Shown in pieces: positions 1 through 63,788 of a stretch of 64,000 nucleotides of DNA (position 1 is its first letter; every line of letters starts with the position of its first letter). The position numbers were made by a program, and so were the translations under genes. The stretch is from the IMG/VR virus record IMGVR_UViG_3300046513_000221, positions 1 through 64,000 of that record; one strand, given 5' to 3'. The notes beneath the pieces were generated by a model. It made no database searches. It was not told the origin of the DNA and saw nothing but the letters and a program-made list of their open reading frames with translations.

Positions 1-237
1 CATGTCGAACTCCTGACCGACGCCGGGAACGTACACGCCCTTAATCGGGCCGAAGGTCTCGTCCTTCTCGAACTGGCAGGTGCCGAGGGTGATGTAGCCG
101 CCCTTGACAGTGACGCTGGTGCGTGCAACGTAGTAGAACACGTTTCCGAACTTCGCGAGGAAGTGGGCCTCGTGCAGGTGACCGCTCAGGGCCACTTGGC
201 CGGTGCGTGGGATCTTGGCGTTTGCTTGAGTGTTCAT
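1..237 (-). CDS. hypothetical protein (runs off window start)
   Basis: Open frame MNTQANAKIPRTGQVALSG... from ATG at 237 with AAGGAAA upstream. Not the frame given in the ORF track (41..283). Confidence 0.65.
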   Translation of the reverse strand, partial: MNTQANAKIPRTGQVALSGHLHEAHFLAKFGNVFYYVARTSVTVKGGYITLGTCQFEKDETFGPIKGVYVPGVGQEFDM

Positions 238-3389: not shown

Positions 3390-3773
3390 TTACTTGCGGA
3401 CGATGGTGAGCATGCGCTCGCCGACGATGATGCCGACGGCGTTCGTGAGATCAGGGTAGAGCGGCTGCAGCTCCTTCATCGAGAGCAGGGTGATGACGAT
3501 GTCGTCGTAGCTCTCGTGGTGGATGCCGTTGCGCTCCTCCGTGAAGCCCCACTTGTGCGTGACGTCGCCAACGGGGGTGTGCTGAACGTGGTACAGCTCG
3601 GTCGGGGTGAAGTGGAACGACACGTCGCCGTACTCCTGCGACATGATGACGGAGAGGCGCGAAGGATCCTTGATCACCTCGGGGTTCTTCTTGAAGATCG
3701 CCAGTGCCTTACCGAAGATCTCGGCGTTCTGCGCGACGCCCATGTCTACGCGGGTCTGGATGCCTTGGATCAT
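3390..3773 (-). CDS. hypothetical protein, 127 aa
   Basis: ORF with codon bias, GGGAA upstream. Confidence 0.65.
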   Translation of the reverse strand: MIQGIQTRVDMGVAQNAEIFGKALAIFKKNPEVIKDPSRLSVIMSQEYGDVSFHFTPTELYHVQHTPVGDVTHKWGFTEERNGIHHESYDDIVITLLSMKELQPLYPDLTNAVGIIVGERMLTIVRK

Positions 3774-3799
3774 TTTTCTGTGTTCCCAAATGTGAGTGA

Positions 3800-4445
3800 T
3801 TACAAAAAATAAGAGAGATGGCCCGATGCCGAAGCACCGAGCCTCTCAACTGCTTCCCTTTTCTGGTGGAGTGGGTCGCTATCTTCTTCTCGTCTGTTGC
3901 TACGTTGGATTTTGAGGTACAGCTGTGTCGTGTGTACTGCCGATACTGCCTTTTCGACCGTGTCCAGTCTACGTTTGGGTTCCACAGGCCACCATTTCGC
4001 CTGAATCGTTAAGCACCGCCTCGTGGCGGCTCTCTGGGTGATGTGATGAGCGCGTTTCAGCCCCATCCGGTACTCGCCCGGTACGTTACTGTGCTACGAG
4101 TCATAGGGAGGAAACCATTTGTCCGTGTCCCTACGAAGTTGATCCCTCAGTCCCCGACGGTCTGAAGAATTTTGATGCAAGAAGTGAGGTTGAGGTGGGT
4201 AGCTTAAAGGCTTCTTCTCCGCTCGTGTGAAGGGGTGGAGAGAAAGGACGCCTCCCTCCTACCCGGAGAGTGGATCCCAATTAGGTGCCTCAGCGAATCG
4301 ATAAGCTGACCCACCGAGGCGAGAACGGTTCTCGAACTAGGTTCGATCCCCATTGGACCGGATTAACGGTAACCCTTTCGGGCTGCTTGAGAACGGGGGT
4401 TCCGTGGAATTCCCCGTAGTTGTTAGATGAACCTTTCAGTCCATC
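3800..4445 (-). ncRNA. candidate ~650-nt structured non-coding RNA
   Basis: No credible ORF. Bounded by an ATATATTAT promoter motif (4452-4460) and a terminator (3803-3847). Many inverted repeats, including the long-range pair GGTGGGT-AGCTTA / TAAGCT-g-ACCCACC. Confidence 0.45.
3803..3847 (-). terminator. intrinsic terminator (UUCG loop)
   Basis: Minus strand GAGAGGCTCGGTGC-TTCG-GCATCGGGCCATCTCTC followed by a T-rich tract. Confidence 0.7.
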
Positions 4446-4451
4446 ATCGAT

Positions 4452-4460
4452 ATAATATAT
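4452..4460 (-). promoter_or_regulatory. putative early promoter ATATATTAT
   Basis: Recurrent intergenic 9-mer resembling the phiKZ early consensus TATATTAC. Confidence 0.6.
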
Positions 4461-4485
4461 CAACAAGTGACCTGCAGATACGGTC

Positions 4486-5085
4486 CTACCGGTGGGAGAG
4501 GATGAGCACGATCGAGGAGTTGTCCTGCAGCTGAGCCCAGAAGGTGTGGTCGCGACCACGGCCCGAGTCGCCCTCGCGGTAGCCGAAGCAGTGCAAACGC
4601 TCGCCGCTCTTCGTGACGAAGCCCTGCAGCATGTCTGCCAGCTCCGAGTCCTTGTCGCCCTGCTCGATCTTACCGGCGTACAGGAAGTCGCGGTCAGAGA
4701 CGTCGTCCGGAGCCTCGTTGTACTCGCGCATGAAGACGTACGACTTGAAGCCCTGATTCAGCAGGTTCTCGTCCGGATGCTGCTCCGCGAAGTGCTGCTG
4801 GAGGAACGCCTTGAACTTGTCGTCCTGAGACGCCTCCGGTTCCTTGAAGGCCGTCGAGATGACGACCTCAACGTCCAGACCCAGAAGGTCGTTGGCCTTT
4901 CCCGAGTTCGTCGGCGGACGCATCGAGCCGTGCTTGCCGATGTAGTGGCGCAGCTTCGGGTCGGTACCCGTGTCCATCGAGACGGTCGCACCGGCGTTCT
5001 CCAGAGCGTTCTTGATGGACAGACCTGCCTGGAACAGGCACTCGTCACCCGCCCTGGACTTCACTTCAAACAAAATCGCTTTCAT
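4486..5085 (-). CDS. hypothetical protein, 199 aa
   Basis: Start moved to MKAILFEV, which has a GGGAG RBS. Confidence 0.7.
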   Translation of the reverse strand: MKAILFEVKSRAGDECLFQAGLSIKNALENAGATVSMDTGTDPKLRHYIGKHGSMRPPTNSGKANDLLGLDVEVVISTAFKEPEASQDDKFKAFLQQHFAEQHPDENLLNQGFKSYVFMREYNEAPDDVSDRDFLYAGKIEQGDKDSELADMLQGFVTKSGERLHCFGYREGDSGRGRDHTFWAQLQDNSSIVLILSHR

Positions 5086-5115
5086 ACCCACTCCCATAAG
5101 AAAACCTACCTTGAT

Positions 5116-6415: not shown

Positions 6416-6792
6416 ACCTCGTACATACCCGGAGGCATGTATGCGCTACGGTACTCTTTCTCCACCACGCTATGGTACCGGCTGATAGCCACGAGGTTGT
6501 CGACGATCTTGACGACATCGCTGGTCAAGTCGGCGTAGCTGCGGATGTCGGTGGCCGGGTTCAGGCCGAGGCGGTCAGCCGTCTCGTGGTCAACCTCCAT
6601 CGCGTCCTCGCGGAAGAAGACGACACCGCCCGGAACAGCCATCCAGACAGCGTAGAACTTCGAGTTGCGGCGGTAGAACTCCGCGACGAACGAGGACTTG
6701 TGTACCTTCAGTGCCGCCTCCAGATCGATAGCGGTTCCCGGAGGGTGGACCATCAGCGCGCCGTGATACGGCTTGGGTGGTGTCTTGCTCAT
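6412..6792 (-). CDS. hypothetical protein, 126 aa
   Basis: Start moved to MSKTPPKP, giving an ATGA overlap with the 6789 stop. Confidence 0.65.
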   Translation of the reverse strand: MSKTPPKPYHGALMVHPPGTAIDLEAALKVHKSSFVAEFYRRNSKFYAVWMAVPGGVVFFREDAMEVDHETADRLGLNPATDIRSYADLTSDVVKIVDNLVAISRYHSVVEKEYRSAYMPPGMYEV

Positions 6793-20336: not shown

Positions 20337-21509
20337 TTACGCCGCCAGAGCGAACATGTCGTCAACTGGACCCGGCAGCGGTTTGGCGTCCTTCAGGTCG
20401 GTCTTGGTCTTGGTCAGAGGATCATCGACCAGACTGCGAGCACGACCGCGCTGAGAACCCTTGCTGCTGCGGGTCTTGCAACCGCCGCCGACGCGCTTCG
20501 TGAACTTGAAGAAGTCCTCCGGGATGAAGGCAGTCAGGGTCTTCGTCTCGGCGTCATAAACGAAGGATGCATTGATGCCGACTTGTACCTCGTCGAACTT
20601 CTCCAGATCTGGCTCGGAGATATTCGACTGCGCCAGAGTCGAGGACTGTACTGCGCCCTGTGCCGTCAGCTTGAAGCCCTTCGGATGGGCCTTCAGCACC
20701 AACATCTGGTTCTTGTCCAGCTCGACGGAGATGTTGCGACCATTGTTGGCGTCGTCGATGTACAGGGAGTCAGCAATCTCCTTGACCATCTTCGAGCCGA
20801 AGGTCACGGTCAGACGACCGAGATTATCGCCCTTGATCTTGCGGTTGTAGCTATAAAACAGCTTCGCCACGATGCGATGATGGTTCGGATACACCGAGTC
20901 CATCAGGAACTTCACCGGGTCGGCGCGGATCAGAGCGATCTGGTCGCTAAACCACAGGCGCAGCTCTGGGTATTTCAGCTGGTTGACCAGACGCGTGTAG
21001 ATTGCCAGATACTCCTTGCCGGATTGGATGATACGGTATCCGGTGCCACGGGAGCCGTCGTTCGTGAAGACCATCTCATGGATGTCGAAGAACGGATGTT
21101 CAGCCAGCGGTGTCTTGCGAGAGCAGCTGTAGAGCGACTTCATGCCGAAGCCGGTCTGCGTGATCTTCATCGCGCCACCCTTCTTACCCTTGCTCTTGAA
21201 CCACAAAGGGATAACCGGGGCGTAACGCTTACCTTCCTTCAGATCGGGGGCCGGGAAGCGGGTACCGGTGTCCATCTGACCGTGACCGTCAGCGGCCAGA
21301 GTCATGGCCCAGATACGGGTGAAGAGTCCTTCGTTGCCGTTCCCGGCACCGTTGCTCTTGCGCAGCCCCTTCGTCACCAGCTCCAGCGATGGCAGCGCGA
21401 TGCGGGACATCGCTCGGAGGATCGGGTCGTTGCGCGAGATCGTCGGCAGGTTCTTAAAGCGGAAGGTGTCCTCGACGCCTTCGATGGTTGCTTGATTGGT
21501 GTCTTTCAT
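20337..21509 (-). CDS. hypothetical protein with ssrA-like C-terminus (DDMFALAA), 390 aa
   Basis: Long biased ORF; ATGA-coupled to the upstream oxygenase gene. Confidence 0.7.
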   Translation of the reverse strand: MKDTNQATIEGVEDTFRFKNLPTISRNDPILRAMSRIALPSLELVTKGLRKSNGAGNGNEGLFTRIWAMTLAADGHGQMDTGTRFPAPDLKEGKRYAPVIPLWFKSKGKKGGAMKITQTGFGMKSLYSCSRKTPLAEHPFFDIHEMVFTNDGSRGTGYRIIQSGKEYLAIYTRLVNQLKYPELRLWFSDQIALIRADPVKFLMDSVYPNHHRIVAKLFYSYNRKIKGDNLGRLTVTFGSKMVKEIADSLYIDDANNGRNISVELDKNQMLVLKAHPKGFKLTAQGAVQSSTLAQSNISEPDLEKFDEVQVGINASFVYDAETKTLTAFIPEDFFKFTKRVGGGCKTRSSKGSQRGRARSLVDDPLTKTKTDLKDAKPLPGPVDDMFALAA

Positions 21510-22252
21510 TTTTCTTCTTTCTTCATTGGTAGAGTGATGACGCCGGTGAGAGGATTCAGGATCTGGTCGGACTGTCCGCGAAGCGACAGATCGATCTTGC
21601 CCTTGAAGAATTCCTTCTCGTGGTATGCCACCCCCATGAGGTCTCGCAGTGCGGGTAGTTCGTAGGAGAAGAAGCCAGCCCAGTACATCTGGAAGCAGCT
21701 GCTCTCGAACTCCTTCTCGGAGAACGAGTCCTTACCCTTCTTGACAACGCCATGGACGTTGCCGGTGTCGAATATCACATGAGTTCCTCGTCGGAGTGGA
21801 ACCCTTACTCCCGAGAGCGGGAAAAGCAGATCCCACTCCTCGTCATCTTCCATCCAGTGGACGAAGAAAGCCTTGTCGGCGAACAGCTCGTAGCTAGTGT
21901 CTACGTGAAAAAAAGAACCTTCACACGCGTTCAGCGCGGGTTCACTACACTTGTCGTTATCTTCACACAACAGCCCCACCTCCTCCGCCCGTAGGCGGAG
22001 GAGGTTAGTGTAGGGATTTGGGGATGCTATGTGTGACGTGAAGACGTCACCGGTACCGGCCAGTGGGTTGGCCGCGTGAAGTTGGTCGATCCAAGAAGCA
22101 TAGAGCTCCTCGTTAATCGCTGGTGTGTCGATATGAGCGGTAATCACTTTGAGGCTCACATTGCGGGCATTCCCCTTGGGGAGCGCAACGTAGAGTTGAT
22201 TCGCTACATCGACACCCTTTTGTATTCCAGGTATCGCACTACTATCCATCAT
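21506..22252 (-). CDS. putative 2-oxoglutarate/Fe(II)-dependent dioxygenase, 248 aa
   Basis: HVD (HxD) motif followed by LRRGTHVIFDTGNVHG (distal His). The canonical 2OG-binding Arg is not obvious. Confidence 0.55.
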   Translation of the reverse strand: MMDSSAIPGIQKGVDVANQLYVALPKGNARNVSLKVITAHIDTPAINEELYASWIDQLHAANPLAGTGDVFTSHIASPNPYTNLLRLRAEEVGLLCEDNDKCSEPALNACEGSFFHVDTSYELFADKAFFVHWMEDDEEWDLLFPLSGVRVPLRRGTHVIFDTGNVHGVVKKGKDSFSEKEFESSCFQMYWAGFFSYELPALRDLMGVAYHEKEFFKGKIDLSLRGQSDQILNPLTGVITLPMKKEEK

Positions 22253-22259
22253 TCACCTC

Positions 22260-23315
22260 TACACACAAATACTCCCAAATAGTCATCGGTTCGGTGGTCA
22301 CAGCCGTGATCCGTACTGGCATCTAGCTATTCCCTTCGTACTGAAGGAATTCGAAGTCGTGACTATTTCTAAACATGGATCGAATTACCTTGCCTAACGG
22401 TAACTTTTCGATCCTGCGCGTGTAATGATGCACCCGTTGAGTGCATGCCCAACGCATGACGCCGATGTTGAACATCCGTGACGTCATCTCCCGGAGATCC
22501 GGGACCGGAACCATCTTCTACCGACTCGCACCCAAGCGCTCGGTCTCCCACCACGGCCATGCAGCCAACGGGATGGTGAAGACGGGTGTTGTAGACTTCA
22601 CCTTTCGGTGTCGCCTCCTGAAGCAGCTGTTCTACCGCCGCTTTGGTGTTGGTATCGCCGACTTTGATGTCGACTAACGGGAAACCATCCGATACAGCAT
22701 GGACGGAATGGGTGCTACCGTTGAGGGAGGTCGTGACCTCTGCCTCGGGCGCTGCTAAACTAGCGCCTTCTTTTATACCGGAACACACAAAATACCTCTA
22801 CTGAAGCATACTGCAATGATACTCTCGGAGTTAGGCAACGACTTCTTACCGTTCCGTGGTTGCAGGGAAATCCTGCACTTGCGACCGATTCGCTTACACT
22901 TGACTTGGATGCCACACATCCGTTGTTGCCAAGTAGGGAATTCACGGCCTTGTATTTGGCGCTAGCATCTTTCCGGGACACAGCTGGTTCACGTACCTGC
23001 GACGGGTGAGAACGCCCGGTACCTTACGAAAAACCATCACGCCTTGCCCTTCCGGGCTGTATCACGAGTACGGAGACGAACCGGGTCTCACCCCGATTTG
23101 ATCGTCTCCGCGCCTGAAGGATCCTACTCTCCAGACTAGCCCCGTGTTGTTGATGAAACGACATCCCTCTCTTGAGTTCAGCCGTACCTCCACGTCACGC
23201 CATCGCCGGAACTCCGGTTGCGCGTGGAATTGTATGAAGTACCTCCGATTACGGATTAACATCCGATCGTCGAACGAGTCCGTCAGGTATCAGGCCTCCA
23301 ATCGACGACCACCAG
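22260..23315 (-). ncRNA. candidate ~1-kb highly structured non-coding RNA
   Basis: 1-kb gap in a dense gene array with more than 15 hairpins; GAAA and GGAA tetraloops and G-U pairs on the minus strand; long-range complementary segments. Confidence 0.55.
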
Positions 23316-23319
23316 TACT

Positions 23320-23706
23320 CTACAGATCTTGCATAATCTCTGCCATGGTGCGTGATGCACCGACGAAGCACATTGTCTTACCGAAGCTATCATCGTACGT
23401 ATGCTCAGAATCGAGCATACGCTTCCACATGGCGTGATTGTACGCCATAGCGTACTCACCGTAGTAGAAGTCCTGCCGGATGATCACGGTCTTCCAACCG
23501 CGCTTCGATGCGAACTGTGCTGCCGTCACAACCAACTCATCGTCAGATACCTTGCGCGAGACAAGGCCATCAAACGGGAGCAGTACAACCCTGATGGAGC
23601 GGCGACCTACACCGCTCACAATGTACGACGGATGGATATCCAATCCGTACGGACGGCGGGTTTGATCCGCGTCACGTTTCTGTCTCACGATGTGAGGCTG
23701 TTTCAT
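23320..23706 (-). CDS. hypothetical protein (paralog of 28806..29129), 128 aa
   Basis: ASKRGWKTVI..D..YGE.A..YN.AM motif. Confidence 0.7.
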   Translation of the reverse strand: MKQPHIVRQKRDADQTRRPYGLDIHPSYIVSGVGRRSIRVVLLPFDGLVSRKVSDDELVVTAAQFASKRGWKTVIIRQDFYYGEYAMAYNHAMWKRMLDSEHTYDDSFGKTMCFVGASRTMAEIMQDL

Positions 23707-23766
23707 ACTTCTTTTCTCCCAGAGGCTTATGTAGCCACGAACAGGCGGGTCTCCCCGCCCTCAGAA

Positions 23767-24324
23767 TTACTTTTTGAGCCGCTTCAGCTCGTAGAACTGG
23801 CACAGGTCGCTGACGAACTCGTTCTTGGTCGCATCTTCGATGATGTCTTCCAGCAATGCAAAGGTATGATTCACCCGCATTCTTACATCACCCGGTGCCG
23901 TGAACTCGACGTTCTCCTCGTTGAGGACGAAGAACGCTTGTCGGATGGCCGACATCATGCGGAAGATCAACGGCAGAGCCTTGTGCAGCTCGTCGTGGGT
24001 TCCCATGATGCTCTGAACGACCTCGATGTACTTGCGGTCCTGCATGGCAAGCACGTCATCAGCCTTACCCATCAGCTGCTTGTAGATCTCGCGCTGCTCT
24101 ACCGGTACACGTCCCTCAGTGTACTCGGTGTGCATGTGCGCCACGGCGGTCTTGATGACGCCGGAGAAATCAGCCAGTTGGCAGGACTTTGCCGCCACAA
24201 GGGCTTCCAAATGTTGAGCGCGTTTGTTCGCTTCTTCATAGCGTGCCCAGCCTTGATCAGCCGAGAGTTGCAGGGCTGCAATTACACGATGCAGACGGGT
24301 CTCTTCTTCGTTTTTGACTTCCAT
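23767..24324 (-). CDS. coiled-coil hypothetical protein, 185 aa
   Basis: Start moved to MEVKNEE (GGGAG RBS), because the upstream ATG abuts the promoter. Confidence 0.65.
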   Translation of the reverse strand: MEVKNEEETRLHRVIAALQLSADQGWARYEEANKRAQHLEALVAAKSCQLADFSGVIKTAVAHMHTEYTEGRVPVEQREIYKQLMGKADDVLAMQDRKYIEVVQSIMGTHDELHKALPLIFRMMSAIRQAFFVLNEENVEFTAPGDVRMRVNHTFALLEDIIEDATKNEFVSDLCQFYELKRLKK

Positions 24325-49892: not shown

Positions 49893-49904
49893 AACATTCA
49901 GATA
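49893..49904 (+). promoter_or_regulatory. putative late promoter AACA-N6-TA
   Basis: AACAttcagaTA upstream of the capsid gene. Confidence 0.75.
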
Positions 49905-49979
49905 GAATGCAGCCTTCAGAGGGCTGTGTAAGTTGATTTAGGATAACCTAAACCTCTTTTACTTTTAAGGAAGAATCAC

Positions 49980-61114: not shown

Positions 61115-61897
61115 TTAGGCCGAAGGGACCGAGGTTGCTACCTCGCTCATGTTCAGGTAATCGTTCTCGTTGTAGAACTTGTAGGTGGACGACTGCGACA
61201 TCTGGGAAGCTGCGAATTTCTCCACAGCGCCGCCGATGTTCATGTAACCCTTGAAGTCCTGTGTCGGCTCGGCGAACTCATGCGAACCCGATTCGAAGTT
61301 GAAGTGGTCCAGGATGATCTTCGTCGGCATGACGTTGGTGTACAGCGCAGCGAACTCGATGTTCGAGCCGTCCGGGCCGTTGCCGAAGTTGTCGGCGTCG
61401 GGACGCGTGACAACGTACAGCAGAATGCCGGTGTGGTTCGACGAGTGGTACGCCAGACCCGATTTCTTCGGATAGGTAGCGATACCCGTCTTCGGATCAC
61501 GGATGCCGGAAACCCACTCGTTGTAGTACTTGGTCTCAGGCGAGCCGGACTTTTCCTGATACTTCAGGGAGAAGCCTTCGGCCTTCTGGACGGTACCCTT
61601 CGCGTGCGAGGTCTCGTTGTTGGTGAAGCCCGACGTGATAGCGCCGGTATCCATCGTCATGTCGCTCAGGCCCGACAGAGCCTTGAAGTTGCGCTCGGAC
61701 AGCTGCTTGAACTCGCGGCCCTCGTCGGTGCCGATCCATTTAGGGACTTTGATCCACTTGATGAATGCGTAACCGGAGACGTACGGGTCTTTGGTGTTTT
61801 CGCCGGTGGCGACGTAGCCGTTGAAGAACGACGCCAGACCGGGATCGACCTTGTGGCTGGTGAGCGAGGTGTCGCGCACCATGTTATCGTTTGCCAT
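61115..61897 (-). CDS. tail tube protein, 260 aa
   Basis: Directly downstream of the sheath gene; DPYVSGYAFIKW, EKSGSP..YYNEW..GIRDP.TG, IE.AALYTNVMP pattern. Confidence 0.7.
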   Translation of the reverse strand: MANDNMVRDTSLTSHKVDPGLASFFNGYVATGENTKDPYVSGYAFIKWIKVPKWIGTDEGREFKQLSERNFKALSGLSDMTMDTGAITSGFTNNETSHAKGTVQKAEGFSLKYQEKSGSPETKYYNEWVSGIRDPKTGIATYPKKSGLAYHSSNHTGILLYVVTRPDADNFGNGPDGSNIEFAALYTNVMPTKIILDHFNFESGSHEFAEPTQDFKGYMNIGGAVEKFAASQMSQSSTYKFYNENDYLNMSEVATSVPSA

Positions 61898-61917
61898 TTC
61901 GATGACCTTTCTGCTGA

Positions 61918-63705
61918 TTAGCGGTTGATGATGAAGTCGGCGAAGATCCGCTCGATCAGACCGTTGAAGGTCAGCTCAACCTGCACACGCACGATCTTTT
62001 GCTGCTTATCGTAGTCGGATGCGTAAACGGTCGCCTTGATGGTCGAGCAAGCACGGTTGCTCACCCACTTCTTCAGGTAACTGTTCAGGTTGTAGGACAT
62101 CGCCTCGTGGGTGATGTCATCGTTGAACTCGTCGCGGTATTCGTCGACGAGTTGCTCGACGTCACGCTTGATACGGAACAGCGCACGAACGTTGTTCAGG
62201 TTCGACAGGGCCGAGTTGACGGTCTGCGAGGTCAGCTGGGTACCGAGATTGACGCGTTTAGGGTCTTTCTCGATGTAGTTGATCTGCTTCTTGTACAGGG
62301 TCTCTTTCCATGCCTCGTTCGGGAAGAAGTTGATGGCTTCGTAGCCCGAGATCACGCCGCGACGTGGACCTGCGAAGGACCAGTGTACGCCGAACTTGTC
62401 GTCGTGCGGGGCGATCTTCTTCGCGAGGAAGTAAGGCGTGGTGACCTTGACGTTCTGGCCGGTGTACTCGTCGTAGACCACGAAGTCCTGTGCGAAGATC
62501 GCGGTGGCGAACGAGGACATACCGATCGAGTTGGTGCGGAAGTCCACGGTCTGCTGCTCATTGGCTTGGAAGCCGCAGTCCAGCAGTGCCACGCAGTCGC
62601 CACGGATGTCCGTAGCCATCTGCGACATGGCGTTCTTCACGGCGGCGCTGTTGTTGCCGTCCAGCATCAGGTCGAACAGGTATTGCTTCTTGTCGGTCGC
62701 GTTGGAGTCCAGCTGGCCGGTGTAGGCTTTGATCAGCAGGGAGTCTTCCGAGTTGCCACCGGTCCAGGTACCTTCCGAGCCGCCCGAGATGTGATTCACG
62801 GTCTTCAGGTCAGCGGCGGTGTCGTCGGTGACTTGGTTATCGGCCAGACCAGCGGTCAGCGGAGTCGCGAACTTGACAGCTTGGTGGATACCTTGTGCGA
62901 CGGACACGCCGTTACGCTCGGCACCGAAGAAGATGTCCAGATGCAGCGGGTTCACAGTATCCGTAGGATTGATGAACTCGCGGATGGTATCGATCAGATC
63001 CTTGCGGTCGAGGACGCGGAAGGTAGTCGAGTACTTGTTGACCACGTTGGCCCAGTACATGGATTCGCGGTTGCGGTCCTTGGCGGTAGGCTCGAACGAA
63101 ACGGTGTATGGACCATCGATGATGGTGTCCACGCCGACCGTGTTCTTCGCGGCGATCTCGAAGGTGTACGTACGGAAGTCGTAGGTACCGTCCAGCGAGT
63201 CCAGCAGCGAGATGCGGAAGCCCAGATCTTCGTAGGCTTTGCCGCGACCGACAGGCATCAGGACGCCCAGCGGGTAGGACACGAAGGTGGCATCGGTCAC
63301 CGGGTCAGCGCCCAGCAGGGTCTGCATCGCGGCGACGGAGGTCGCGCCCGGTACAGTCGTCAGCGTTGGCTTGACGATGTTGGTCAGGCCATCCTGACCG
63401 CAAGCGACGCTCAGCATCGCGTTGGCGTACAGGCCGTCTTCCGGCAGAATGCGGATGAAGTAGGCTTCGCCGCCAGCTTTCAGATGCTCGAACACGTTGT
63501 AGAGCGTCTGGCCGGTTTCCGACATATCGGGTTCACCGAAGTAGAACTTCGCCTCGCCGACGGAGGTCAGGCGCACCAGTTTGTTGTCTGGGCCTTTGGT
63601 TGCTTTACCGCATGCAAACAGGACGGTCGAGCCCTCAGCCGTCTGGAAGACGAAGGAGTTGTCGATGATCCTGGAATGCACTGAAGGGTGGAGATATTCA
63701 GGCAT
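61918..63705 (-). CDS. contractile tail sheath protein, 595 aa
   Basis: MPEYLHPSV..., FAGPRRGVI, LYKKQINYI and LNNVRAL..IKR sheath C-terminal motifs. Confidence 0.9.
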   Translation of the reverse strand: MPEYLHPSVHSRIIDNSFVFQTAEGSTVLFACGKATKGPDNKLVRLTSVGEAKFYFGEPDMSETGQTLYNVFEHLKAGGEAYFIRILPEDGLYANAMLSVACGQDGLTNIVKPTLTTVPGATSVAAMQTLLGADPVTDATFVSYPLGVLMPVGRGKAYEDLGFRISLLDSLDGTYDFRTYTFEIAAKNTVGVDTIIDGPYTVSFEPTAKDRNRESMYWANVVNKYSTTFRVLDRKDLIDTIREFINPTDTVNPLHLDIFFGAERNGVSVAQGIHQAVKFATPLTAGLADNQVTDDTAADLKTVNHISGGSEGTWTGGNSEDSLLIKAYTGQLDSNATDKKQYLFDLMLDGNNSAAVKNAMSQMATDIRGDCVALLDCGFQANEQQTVDFRTNSIGMSSFATAIFAQDFVVYDEYTGQNVKVTTPYFLAKKIAPHDDKFGVHWSFAGPRRGVISGYEAINFFPNEAWKETLYKKQINYIEKDPKRVNLGTQLTSQTVNSALSNLNNVRALFRIKRDVEQLVDEYRDEFNDDITHEAMSYNLNSYLKKWVSNRACSTIKATVYASDYDKQQKIVRVQVELTFNGLIERIFADFIINR

Positions 63706-63776
63706 GTTTCTTTCCTTAGAGAAAGTGGTTATTGACTTCCAAAAGTCGGTGTTACGATAAACTTTGGAATGCGATC

Positions 63777-63788
63777 TAATCTACTGTT
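63777..63788 (-). promoter_or_regulatory. putative late promoter AACA-N6-TA
   Basis: AACAgtagatTA upstream of the sheath gene. Confidence 0.75.

What the first reader, a model, noticed from the sequence alone, without database searches (positions are those of the whole stretch)
3800..4460. ~650-nt non-coding unit with its own early promoter and terminator: candidate large structured RNA
Seen: ATATATTAT at 4452-4460 points into 650 nt with no credible ORF, ending at a UUCG terminator. Helices include CCC-GAAA-GGG, CCGCC-acga-GGCGG, ACGGGG/CCCCGT, TAGGGA/TCCCTA and a 13-bp long-range pair (about 4195-4207 with 4302-4315). The minus strand contains GGGGCTG and ends near CTCCACCA, a tRNA-Ala/tmRNA-like 3' end, but has no T-loop or tag ORF. 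Established: phages carry large ncRNAs such as GOLLD and ROOL. Inference: an early, independently transcribed RNA of unknown class, possibly a tRNA-like decoy. Some stems have G-U pairs on the plus strand, so the functional strand is not certain.
Basis: partly seen in the sequence, partly recalled or inferred. Interest (0 to 1): 0.7.

Follow-up and report, generated by a model that had tools for sequence, protein, structure and literature searches.

The report
New large folded early phage RNA
A giant soil phage carries a self-contained gene, switched on at the very start of infection, that makes a roughly 640-base intricately folded RNA instead of a protein; it matches no known RNA family and its job is still unknown.

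Summary
Window 3805-4445 (minus strand) is a complete transcription unit in a 263-kb AR9/phiR1-37-like jumbo phage. It has an AR9-type early promoter (TATATTAT-N6-G, +1 at 4445), about 641 nt with no coding signal, and a 14-bp UUCG terminator. It is the longest non-coding stretch in the genome. Its 672-nt distance to the next gene compares with 15-60 nt for most other early promoters.

A second phage (L011) keeps the unit at 79% identity, against about 62% at four-fold sites of neighbouring genes. Indels there are not multiples of three and no ORF is conserved.

A curated 155-pair structure is 98% paired across three alleles. It has 17 compensatory pairs (0-3 in slid controls) and 19 G-U pairs that only work on the minus strand. 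GNRA loops stay GNRA.

Two hairpins (P3, P6) are hypervariable between near-identical strains yet stay paired.

There is no Rfam match and no homolog in any other searched sequence collection. The best reading is a new large structured early phage RNA that acts as RNA. The main rival is a cis-acting leader for the downstream operon. No expression data exist and only three alleles are known.

The parts
4474..4484 (-). Upstream promoter element ACCGTATCTGC, about 14 nt upstream of the AT-rich core
   Evidence: Similar (A/T)CG(A/T)A(T/A)C(T)G elements precede most TATATTAT sites in the genome. It is identical in L011.
4452..4460 (-). Early (virion RNA polymerase type) promoter core ATATATTAT
   Evidence: 6 copies in the window against 0.15 expected. 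It matches the AR9 early consensus AAATATATATTAT-N6-G+1 (PMC5312081). It is conserved in L011.
4445..4445 (-). Inferred transcription start (+1, G), 6 nt after the core
   Evidence: Inferred from the AR9/phiR1-37 spacing rule. It has not been mapped experimentally.
3805..4445 (-). Whole RNA, about 641 nt (transcript position p = 4446 minus window coordinate)
   Evidence: No coding signal. 79% identical to L011 against about 62% at four-fold sites of neighbouring genes. 155-pair structure, 98% paired in three alleles.
4426..4445 (-). P1: 8-bp hairpin that starts at +1, with a GAAA loop (GGAA in L011)
   Evidence: Pair probability 0.98-0.99. Hairpins starting at +1 are common to this phage's early transcripts.
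4393..4417 (-). P2 hairpin (ACGGGG/CCCCGU with inner UUC/GAA)
   Evidence: One compensatory pair (C-G to U-A) and one mismatch in L011.
4371..4384 (-). P3: hypervariable 5-bp hairpin with a GNRA loop
   Evidence: Three alleles with loops GAAA, GUGA and GAGA. Two positions show compensatory changes: A-U to G-C, and C-G to A-U or U-G.
4356..4370 (-). P4 5' strand (ACCGU-UAA-UCCGGUC) of the long-range helix that closes the roughly 400-nt core
   Evidence: It pairs with 3957-3969. Both strands are invariant. Pair probability is 0.87-0.91 in the reference; forcing it in L011 costs 2 kcal/mol.
4324..4354 (-). P5 hairpin with outer helix
   Evidence: One compensatory pair (A-U to G-C) and several changes to or from G-U.
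4287..4320 (-). P6: hypervariable 13-bp hairpin
   Evidence: X3 strain: 12 substitutions, comprising 3 compensatory pairs, 2 G-U to G-C changes, 1 break and 3 loop changes. In L011 nearly every pair differs, yet 13/13 are paired and the loop is GAGA.
4233..4264 (-). P7: purine/pyrimidine hairpin that sequesters UAGGAGG
   Evidence: Kept in L011 with a shortened stem.
4222..4226 (-). 5' strand of the tentative long-range helix LR220 (pairs with 4096-4100)
   Evidence: ACGAG/CUCGU becomes GUGGG/UCCGC: 4 of 5 pairs change and all stay paired. Such helices occur 0.05 times per column shuffle. Thermodynamic folding does not predict it.
4096..4100 (-). 3' strand of the tentative long-range helix LR220
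   Evidence: See the 5' strand.
4142..4170 (-). P9: 9-bp hairpin with an invariant 11-nt loop RCCGUCGGGGA
   Evidence: Two U-G pairs become C-G and U-A in L011. The loop is conserved.
4103..4134 (-). P10 hairpin (UAGGGA...UCCCUA), inside the most conserved block
   Evidence: Pair probability 0.99. The 24-nt block GGAUCAACUUCGUAGGGACACGGA is identical in L011.
4011..4034 (-). P13 hairpin (GCCGCC-ACGA-GGCGGU)
   Evidence: L011 loses one base pair, one nucleotide from each strand, and its loop becomes UCGG.
3976..4003 (-). P14 (CAGGC/GCCUG, 9-nt loop GAAAUGGUG) and P15
   Evidence: The stems are invariant. The loop changes UG to GA in L011, with one matching change at transcript 252 (CCACC to CCACU); this possible loop contact is tentative.
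3957..3969 (-). P4 3' strand (GACUGGA-C-ACGGU)
   Evidence: It lies in a 22-nt block identical in L011 and pairs with 4356-4370.
3917..3949 (-). Three GCWGUAY repeats (GCAGUAU, GCAGUAC, GCUGUAC)
   Evidence: Read directly from the sequence. L011 has three GCAGUAC repeats. Their role is unknown.
3852..3879 (-).
   Evidence: Pair probability 0.99. It lies inside a roughly 125-nt block that is 97-100% identical to L011.
3804..3847 (-). Intrinsic terminator: 14-bp stem, UUCG loop, then UUAUUUUUU
   Evidence: Identical in L011 except one base.
3390..3773 (-). Downstream 127-aa gene, reached only by reading through the terminator
   Evidence: 81% identical in L011. It has no other homolog among 1.84 billion representatives. 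No early or AR9-type late promoter motif lies between it and the RNA.
4486..5097 (-). Upstream 203-aa gene, whose stop codon lies 26 nt before the promoter core
   Evidence: 47% identical to the L011 counterpart.

Best explanation
Window 4484-3804 (minus strand) is a self-contained early transcription unit of an AR9/phiR1-37-like jumbo phage. The injected virion RNA polymerase starts at G4445 and a strong UUCG terminator stops most transcripts near 3805. The product is a discrete RNA of about 641 nt that codes for nothing and folds into a compact multi-domain structure.

The structure has:
- a 5' hairpin at +1;
- two small hairpins, P2 and P3;
- a core of about 400 nt closed by an invariant long-range helix, P4;
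- a 3' domain with repeated GCWGUAY motifs, a large conserved loop, and the terminator.

The product works as RNA. The most likely mode is in trans, as a stable folded particle that binds one or more proteins or RNAs during host take-over. Invariant loops and single strands would be the contact sites. The two GNRA-capped peripheral hairpins P3 and P6 would be a fast-evolving surface. It belongs to no described RNA family.

Shown: the unit's anatomy, absence of coding, conservation above the neutral level, compensatory base changes, and strand.
Inferred: the start site, that termination is efficient, that the RNA accumulates, and any action in trans.

My probabilities: about 0.85 that it is a selected, structured RNA; about 0.5 that it acts mainly as a stand-alone trans-acting RNA; about 0.2 or less for any particular partner, such as an anti-defence decoy.
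For: Phage identity. The major capsid protein is 46% identical to phiR1-37 and 36% to AR9/PBS1. The genome has split RNA polymerase and split PolB genes.

Promoter and terminator. The promoter matches the mapped AR9 early consensus. The terminator is supported.

Non-coding.
- Codon score is negative in all frames and this is the longest such stretch in the genome.
- Indels against L011 are of 1, 2, 5 and 8 nt, and no ORF is conserved.
- The one 28-codon TTG frame that is open in both phages is frame-shifted between them.

Selection. The RNA is 79% identical between two phages whose neighbouring proteins are 47-81% identical and whose four-fold sites are 50-73% identical. Blocks of 15-63 nt are identical.

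Structure.
- The 155-pair model is 98% paired across three alleles, with 17 pairs changed on both sides and 17 on one side. Partners slid by 1-3 columns give 37-49% paired and 0-3 double changes.
- Stems of 5 bp or more with at least 2 double changes: 3 observed against 0.58 in column shuffles. With at least 4 changed pairs: 2 against 0.05, reached in 0 of 200 shuffles.
- GNRA loops are kept as GNRA through sequence change, and one base pair is deleted from both strands of P13.
- There are 19 G-U pairs and no mismatch in the reference.
- Sense-strand z-scores are -2.6 in both phages.

Leader length. 672 nt against 15-60 nt for most early promoters.

Not a known family. No Rfam hit. No similar DNA in phages, IMG/VR, metagenome contigs, bacterial genomes or the phage's own genome.
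Against: There is no transcript evidence. The three public runs that hold the sequence are DNA metagenomes.

Only three alleles exist, and two of them are near-identical outside two hairpins. Covariation statistics are therefore weak, and the structure was derived from the same sequences it is scored on.

Fold z-scores are modest, and L011's antisense strand also scores -2.1.

The downstream genes have no recognisable promoter of their own. The unit must therefore also serve as their leader, at least through readthrough. The best-conserved 125 nt span the terminator and the start of the next gene, which fits a cis role.

No partner, target or complementary site was found.
Confidence: 0.5

Rival explanations
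1. Cis-acting leader or attenuator. The 641 nt would be the 5' untranslated leader of the early operon 3773 to 385, which encodes proteins of 127, 121, 82, 621 and 139 aa. Its folded domains would sense a host or phage factor and set how often the polymerase reads through the UUCG terminator into those genes.
For: No early promoter motif and no AR9-type late promoter (AACA-N6-TA) lies on the minus strand between 6500 and 441. The downstream genes therefore depend on this promoter or on far-upstream ones.

Only about 30 nt separate the terminator's U-run from the downstream start codon.

The 125 nt spanning P18, the terminator, the spacer and the start codon are 97-100% identical between the two phages.

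AR9 itself has 5' UTRs of up to 491 nt.

A repeated CGUAG...GGACACGG motif offers alternative partners for the P4 strand. L011's minimum-energy fold uses the alternative.
Against: I could find no alternative (anti-terminator) pairing with either arm of the terminator.

A length of 640 nt, a long-range closing helix and many GNRA loops are far more than known attenuators need.

The hypervariable hairpins have no obvious role in a leader.

The high-identity tract may be a recombination tract; comparable 60-nt windows of 95-98% identity occur inside nearby genes.
Confidence: 0.27
2. tRNA-like or tmRNA-like decoy. GGGGCUG and CUCCACCA would form an alanine-type acceptor end that is processed and charged, or that traps a tRNA-handling enzyme.
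For: Both motifs are present on the transcript strand (4064-4058 and 3871-3864). CUCCACCA lies in an invariant block.
Against: ARAGORN finds no tRNA or tmRNA in the window or genome, and there is no Rfam tmRNA or tRNA hit even at E = 10.

There is no T-arm next to CUCCACCA and no tag frame.

CUCCACCA lies in the loop of P18, 55-60 nt from the 3' end.

GGGGCUG is part of the P12 stem and becomes GAGGCUG in L011 without a matching change.

The two motifs can form only 5 of 7 pairs.
Confidence: 0.03
3. Decayed or tiny coding sequence. The region would be the remnant of a lost gene, or would encode short peptides, and the hairpins would be incidental.
For: Small ORFs exist: 88 aa (4066-3800), two of 49 aa, and a 28-codon TTG frame that is open in both phages.
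Against: Codon score is negative in every frame. The 88-aa ORF runs through the terminator and is broken in L011. The peptides of the shared 28-codon frame differ through plus-or-minus 1 indels.

Conservation exceeds that of four-fold sites. Changes are compensatory in stems. A decaying remnant would show neither.
Confidence: 0.05
4. DNA-level element. Examples would be a replication origin, a packaging or recombination site, or protein-binding inverted repeats, in which the hairpins reflect DNA palindromes. Template switching at quasi-palindromes would copy a mutation from one arm to the other.
For: Clustered, arm-to-arm matched changes in P3 and P6 are what quasi-palindrome correction can produce. 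The region is the largest gene-free stretch in the genome.
Against: There are 19 G-U pairs and no A-C pairs in the reference, and only the sense strand folds better than shuffles in the reference. DNA palindromes would be strand-symmetric.

Loops stay GNRA or UNCG on one strand only.

The helices P4 and LR220 pair partners 120-400 nt apart.

The unit is exactly framed by a promoter and a terminator.
Confidence: 0.05
5. Self-splicing intron or other mobile ribozyme lying between two exon-like ORFs.
For: The size and the many GNRA loops resemble group I and group II introns. AR9 has introns in late genes.
Against: No Rfam group I, group II or small-ribozyme hit at E up to 10.

The upstream ORF ends with a conserved stop and the downstream one starts with its own ATG in both phages.

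A promoter and a terminator lie inside the would-be intron.

The flanking proteins have no homologs in which they are fused.
Confidence: 0.03

Closest known systems
GOLLD and ROOL (large, ornate non-coding RNAs often carried by phages and prophages; Rfam RF01998, RF03087)
   Same: Size class of roughly 600-800 nt. Phage-borne and non-coding. Multi-domain fold rich in tetraloops. Function unknown.
   Different: There is no sequence or structure match to either covariance model. This RNA sits in an AR9-like jumbo phage of a soil community, not in Bacillota phages, and is not next to tRNA genes; the genome has none. It is known from only two phage lineages. Whether it multimerises, as GOLLD and ROOL do (10.1101/2024.12.08.627333), is untested.
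AR9 early transcription units with long 5' UTRs (Lavysh et al. 2017, PMC5312081)
   Same: The same promoter grammar (TATATTAT-N6-G+1), read by the virion RNA polymerase. AR9 has leaders of up to 491 nt of unknown role.
   Different: Here the leader is 672 nt and is closed by a strong terminator before the next gene. It is conserved with compensatory changes. No similarity to AR9 or phiR1-37 DNA was found.
phiR1-37 misc_4 (296-nt intergenic RNA seen by RNA-seq; Leskinen et al. 2016, PMC4848604)
   Same: An intergenic non-coding transcript in the closest cultured relative.
   Different: misc_4 (61,640-61,936) is AT-rich and lies between a virion RNA polymerase gene and an NTP pyrophosphatase gene. 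It has no recognisable similarity, and neither of the two core models matches there.
tmRNA / tRNA-like elements of phages
   Same: Shares the short strings GGGGCUG and CUCCACCA.
   Different: There is no acceptor stem, T-arm, tag frame or terminal CCA, and no detector calls it.
Immunity RNAs with co-varying specificity helices (P1/P7 c4, P4 CI; from my own knowledge, not tested here)
   Same: Closely related phages differ by matched changes on both sides of short helices, while the rest of the RNA is conserved.
   Different: Those RNAs are 70-80 nt and pair with target sites in an mRNA. Here both arms lie in the same hairpin and no external target was found.

Membership tests
AR9/phiR1-37-type early (virion RNA polymerase) transcription unit | AT-rich core TATATTAT followed by 6 nt and a G start | tested here: met
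   GATATATTAT-ATCGAT-G at 4461-4445 on the minus strand. The same form occurs at about 20 other sites. Consensus taken from PMC5312081.
AR9/phiR1-37-type early (virion RNA polymerase) transcription unit | Transcript actually starts there early in infection | not testable with these tools
   No RNA run holds the sequence.
Any Rfam 15 family (including GOLLD, ROOL, OLE, HEARO, raiA, RNase P, tmRNA, 6S, group I/II introns, riboswitches) | Covariance-model score at or above the family's gathering threshold | tested here: not met
   0 hits in the 64-kb window at gathering score. In 3600-4700 the best hit is 16 bits at E = 1.3.
tmRNA / tRNA-like | Acceptor stem joining the 5' end to a 3'-terminal (N)CCA, with an adjacent T-arm | tested here: not met
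   ARAGORN finds 0 genes. CUCCACCA is internal, in the P18 loop. GGGGCUG is not conserved.
tmRNA / tRNA-like | Tag-peptide reading frame (tmRNA) | tested here: not met
   No conserved ORF.
Structured non-coding RNA (generic) | No conserved reading frame | tested here: met
Structured non-coding RNA (generic) | Base pairs kept through compensatory substitutions | tested here: met
   17 double-sided changes in 155 pairs against 0-3 in slid controls. Shuffle test. Caveat: only three alleles, and the structure was derived from them.
Structured non-coding RNA (generic) | Discrete stable transcript | not testable with these tools
   Only DNA metagenome runs hold it.
Transcription attenuator / riboswitch-like leader | Mutually exclusive terminator and anti-terminator structures | tested here: inconclusive
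   The terminator is present and conserved. I found no convincing anti-terminator by inspecting folds. Alternative pairing does exist elsewhere, between the P4 strand and the repeated GGACACGG motif.
Group I / group II intron | Interrupts a gene whose exons join into one frame; conserved catalytic core | tested here: not met
   The flanking ORFs are separate genes in both phages. There is no core-model hit.

The most novel reading that the evidence does not exclude
The RNA is a new class of large phage ribonucleoprotein or RNA-only particle, made in the first minutes of infection. Its two hypervariable, structure-preserving hairpins (P3 and P6) form an arms-race or specificity surface. Three roles would fit: a decoy for a host RNA-binding defence, an escape from RNA-targeting immunity, or a strain-specific self-recognition module that lets closely related jumbo phages tell their own transcripts or genomes apart.

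The evidence that does not exclude this:
- 18 of 20 substitutions between near-identical strains fall in these 48 nt (p about 1e-19);
- there are three alleles of each hairpin;
- pairing and GNRA loops are always kept.
Probability: 0.15. Interest if true: 0.85.

Novelty: new variant of a known kind. Interest (0 to 1): 0.6.

Why it matters
Non-coding RNAs longer than 500 nt with conserved, intricate folds are rare in bacteria and phages. There are about a dozen classes, and each has turned out to be a ribozyme, a ribonucleoprotein core or a remarkable RNA-only assembly.

This would be the first such candidate in the AR9/phiR1-37 group of jumbo phages, which bring their own RNA polymerase. It would be expressed from the earliest promoter class, so it is placed to act in host take-over.

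The two hairpins change about 40% of their bases between strains that are otherwise 99-100% identical, yet they always stay paired. This gives a concrete, testable handle on what part of the RNA meets a fast-evolving partner.

The limits are real. The RNA is known from two uncultured phage lineages only, has no expression data, and its function is open.

Tried and rejected
1. Known RNA families: Rfam at gathering score and at E up to 10 gave nothing.
2. tRNA/tmRNA: ARAGORN on the window and on the whole genome gave nothing.
3. Similar DNA: blastn against 50,697 phage records; exact conserved 18-20-mers in IMG/VR (42, 43), JGI metagenome contigs (47, 60) and 185,579 bacterial genomes (120, 121). 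All empty.
4. Own genome: no paralog or antisense target.
5. Relatives through neighbouring proteins. Three word-indexed searches of 5.8 billion proteins gave only a near-identical contig (L012) and one true relative (L011). A profile search of 1.84 billion representatives found nothing more. Back-translated scans of IMG/VR with single proteins and with alignments were empty.
6. Nearest IMG/VR relatives by capsid protein (G001-G004, 50-76% identity) and phiR1-37: no DNA match and no match to two core covariance models. One 16-bit hit in G002 lies in what appears to be coding sequence and matches only P9, so I rejected it.
7. phiR1-37 misc_4: not similar.
8. Expression: no RNA run holds the sequence.
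9. Neighbouring proteins: no Pfam or PHROG family and no informative look-alikes.
11. DGR-like mutagenesis of the hairpins: rejected, because the changes are not adenine-specific.
12. Tetraloop-receptor rules linking the P3 loop to P6 base pairs (recalled from memory): no consistent fit, so I left this open.
13. I did not run the count of structure pairs on the full alignment, because that would have required typing a 700-character structure string. Equivalent counts and slid controls were computed in Python.
Full report
WHAT THE WINDOW IS. The window is the first 64 kb of a 263,413-bp virus record from IMG/VR. Its 29-bp terminal repeat is only an assembly overlap, so the position "near the left end" has no meaning. 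Public rhizosphere metagenomes hold the sequence. The phage belongs to the AR9/PBS1/phiR1-37 group of jumbo phages. Its major capsid protein is 46% identical to phiR1-37 and 36% to AR9. It has split RNA polymerase beta-like genes and a split family-B DNA polymerase. It has no tRNA genes. The whole left 26 kb is transcribed leftward, on the minus strand.

CHECK OF THE OBSERVATION. ATATATTAT is on the minus strand at 4460-4452. TATATTAT occurs six times in the window, always on the minus strand, against 0.15 expected. About 23 sites occur genome-wide, sharing the form TATATTAT-N6-G and an upstream CG(A/T)A(T/A)C-like element. This is the early-promoter consensus mapped by dRNA-seq and primer extension in AR9 (AAATATATATTAT-N6-G+1). 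According to the same paper, phiR1-37 also starts 6 nt downstream (PMC5312081). I therefore place +1 at G4445.

On the same strand a terminator follows: a 14-bp stem with a UUCG loop at 3847-3815, then UUAUUUUUU. It is one of only two strong minus-strand terminators in 20 kb. The transcript would be about 641 nt.

A codon log-likelihood trained on the phage's 59 largest ORFs is negative in all six frames from 3780 to 4480. It is +0.5 to +0.9 in the flanking genes 4486-5097 and 3390-3773. By this measure the stretch is the longest non-coding one in the genome. Most other early promoters lie 15-60 nt from their first gene. This one lies 672 nt away.

HOMOLOGS. Nothing similar exists in 50,697 phage records. 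Conserved 18-20-mers are absent from IMG/VR (42, 43), JGI metagenome contigs (47, 60) and bacterial genomes (120, 121). The phage's own genome has no second copy (10, 72).

Searching the neighbouring proteins found one identical copy (L012) and one true relative. That relative is an 8.5-kb JGI contig (L011). L011 is syntenic. Its proteins are 47%, 81%, 51% and 59% identical to the window's. It has a 705-nt gene-free gap at the same place.

A third allele came from laying the contigs of three public runs on the region. Run X3 holds a strain with 20 substitutions and two 1-nt deletions inside the RNA. The closest IMG/VR relatives by capsid protein (G001-G004) and phiR1-37 lack the neighbourhood, the DNA, and matches to two core covariance models.

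CONSERVATION AND NON-CODING NATURE. The promoter, +1, all major blocks and the terminator align between the window and L011. Identity is 79% over 620 ungapped columns. Four-fold degenerate sites of the five neighbouring genes are 50-73% identical (219/351 = 62% pooled). The sequence is therefore under purifying selection.

Indels are of 1, 2, 3, 5 and 8 nt. The 88-aa ORF in the window is broken in L011. The only frame open in both phages (28-29 codons, TTG start) is shifted by plus-or-minus 1 indels, so the peptides agree only where the nucleotides are identical.

STRUCTURE. In what follows, transcript position p = 4446 minus the window coordinate.

I derived helices from single-sequence folds, RNAalifold and an exhaustive list of stems that can pair in all three alleles. 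I then fixed them by hand.
- P1, 1-20: hairpin at +1, loop GAAA or GGAA.
- P2, 29-53.
- P3, 62-75: GNRA loop.
- P4: long-range helix 76-80/485-489 plus 84-90/477-483, invariant, closing the core.
- P5, 92-122.
- P6, 126-159.
- P7, 182-213.
- LR220: tentative long-range helix 220-224/346-350, enclosing P8, P9 and P10.
- P9, 276-304: invariant loop RCCGUCGGGGA.
- P10, 312-343.
- P11, P12, P13, P14 and P15.
- A 3' domain with three GCWGUAY repeats and P17.
- P18, 567-594: loop ACUCCACCAGAAAA.
- The terminator.

Across three alleles the 155 pairs are 98% paired. Seventeen pairs change on both sides and 17 on one side. Sliding the 3' partners by 1-3 columns gives 37-49% paired and 0-3 double changes.

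In 200 column shuffles, stems of at least 5 bp with at least 2 double changes average 0.58, against 3 observed. Stems with at least 4 changed pairs average 0.05, against 2 observed.

Further signs of selection at the RNA level:
- The P3 loop is GAAA, GUGA or GAGA.
- The P1 loop is GAAA or GGAA.
- P13 loses one pair from both strands and gains a UCGG loop.
- P6 in L011 is capped by GAGA.

The reference has 19 G-U pairs and no mismatch, so the same helices on the plus strand would carry 19 A-C mismatches. Sense-strand folding z-scores are -2.56 (window) and -2.65 (L011). Antisense scores are -0.55 and -2.09. The functional strand is therefore the minus strand.

Caveats: there are only three alleles, the structure was built on the sequences it is scored on, and LR220 and the loop contacts rest on few changes.

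The 13-bp pair 4195-4207 with 4302-4315 is perfect in the window. It falls to 9/13 and 8/13 in the other alleles without compensation, while the competing local hairpin P6 keeps 12-13 of 13 pairs. I reject the long-range pair.

GGGGCUG lies in the P12 stem and is GAGGCUG in L011. CUCCACCA lies in the P18 loop, about 60 nt from the 3' end. No tRNA or tmRNA detector responds. The tRNA-like decoy idea is not supported.

HYPERVARIABLE HAIRPINS. Between the window and the X3 strain, 18 of the 20 substitutions inside the RNA fall in P6 (12 in 34 nt) and P3 (6 in 14 nt). Fisher p is about 3e-20 against the rest of the RNA. The flanking 737 nt of coding sequence have 6 changes. A 2.4-kb stretch elsewhere (21400-23815) has none.

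In P6, three pairs change on both sides, two G-U pairs become G-C, one pair breaks and three loop bases change. In P3, two pairs change on both sides and the loop goes from GAAA to GUGA.

L011 carries a third, different allele of each hairpin. The changes are not adenine-specific, so this is not DGR-like mutagenesis. No bacterial sequence matches P6. The cause is unexplained. Possibilities are diversifying selection on a contact surface, repeated short-patch exchange, and quasi-palindrome correction. The strand-specific G-U pairs and GNRA loops argue that the constraint, at least, acts on RNA.

HOW IT MOST LIKELY WORKS.
Shown: a promoter-to-terminator unit on the minus strand, non-coding, selected, with compensatory changes.
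Inferred: the virion RNA polymerase makes it immediately after injection; most transcripts stop at the UUCG terminator; the product is a stable folded RNA of about 641 nt that acts as RNA.

I think a stand-alone, trans-acting role is the most likely, at about 0.5. In that role the RNA would be a protein- or RNA-binding particle in host take-over. Its invariant loops and single strands would be contact sites, and P3/P6 would be the fast-evolving periphery.

The main rival, at about 0.27, is a cis-acting leader or attenuator. The genes from 3773 down to 385 have neither an early nor an AR9-type late promoter motif, so they must be reached through this terminator. The best-conserved 125 nt span the terminator and the next start codon. 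Against this, I found no anti-terminator, and the architecture is far more elaborate than known attenuators. The two roles are not mutually exclusive.

Coding, DNA-level and intron readings each get 0.05 or less, for the reasons given in the rivals.

COMPARISON WITH WHAT IS KNOWN. In kind it resembles GOLLD and ROOL, which are large ornate phage-borne RNAs of unknown function. It is not a member of these or of any Rfam family. Its promoter grammar is that of AR9 early units, some of which have long leaders. phiR1-37's intergenic RNA misc_4 is unrelated. I therefore file it as a new family within the known kind "large structured phage RNA".

Interest is moderate to high. The class is rare and the hairpin pattern is striking. 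However, the distribution is narrow, the evidence rests on three alleles, and nothing is known about expression or function.

NEIGHBOURS. The 127-aa downstream and 203-aa upstream proteins have no family, no informative look-alike and, for the former, no homolog beyond L011. They give no clue to function.

Noticed in passing
genome-wide; e.g. window 4445-4426, and genome 97304, 126438, 145956, 219273: Most early transcripts of this phage would begin with a hairpin whose first paired base is +1, for example GAGUC-GUAGAU-GACUC and GGAUC-GAGGUUUCU-GAUCC. P1 of the RNA is therefore a general feature of early transcripts, perhaps for 5'-end protection or promoter escape, and not special to this RNA.
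   Followed up: partly
genome 129694-130295, plus strand (L016:2195-2796): A second promoter-to-terminator unit without a convincing ORF. It has tandem TATATTAA promoters (+1 at 129708 and 129784) and two further degenerate promoter-like repeats inside. A terminator with U13 lies at 130269-130291. The codon score is low. Fold z is -2.4 on the plus strand against -0.9 on the minus strand, and there is no Rfam hit. It is possibly another early non-coding RNA.
   Followed up: partly
window 22723-23391, minus strand: A 669-nt stretch with low codon score and fold z of -2.6. It shares four rare motifs with the RNA at 3805-4445: UCAUC(N)AACAAC-ACGGGG, CAGCCCG(R)AAGGG, GUAA(S)GUACCGGGCG and GUUAAUCCG. 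The last two occur only at these two loci in 263 kb. It may be a diverged partial paralog. It lacks the P9/P10 core and shows no hairpin-clustered variation in X2 or X3.
   Followed up: partly
window 49893-49905 and 63776-63788; about 40 other sites genome-wide: The AR9-type late promoter motif AACA-N6-TA(G/A) precedes the capsid, sheath and other genes: 43 of 293 genes against about 5% expected. Both AR9 promoter classes therefore appear to be conserved in this GC-rich soil relative.
   Followed up: partly
window 3917-3949, 4123-4135 and 3959-3974: Internal repeats in the RNA. There are three GCWGUAY motifs in the 3' domain, and three GCAGUAC in L011. There are also two copies of CGUAG(N0-3)GGACACGG, at transcript 311-323 and 472-487. 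These could offer alternative partners for the P4 5' strand. L011's minimum-energy fold uses the alternative.
   Followed up: no
window 1-29 and genome 263385-263413: The record's direct terminal repeat is only 29 bp, that is, an assembly overlap. The true genome ends are unknown.
   Followed up: yes
window 6416-6776: A simple longest-ORF pass leaves a 361-nt gap here and calls shadow ORFs on the plus strand. The sequence looks coding on the minus strand. High-GC shadow ORFs on the plus strand are common across the left 20 kb.
   Followed up: partly
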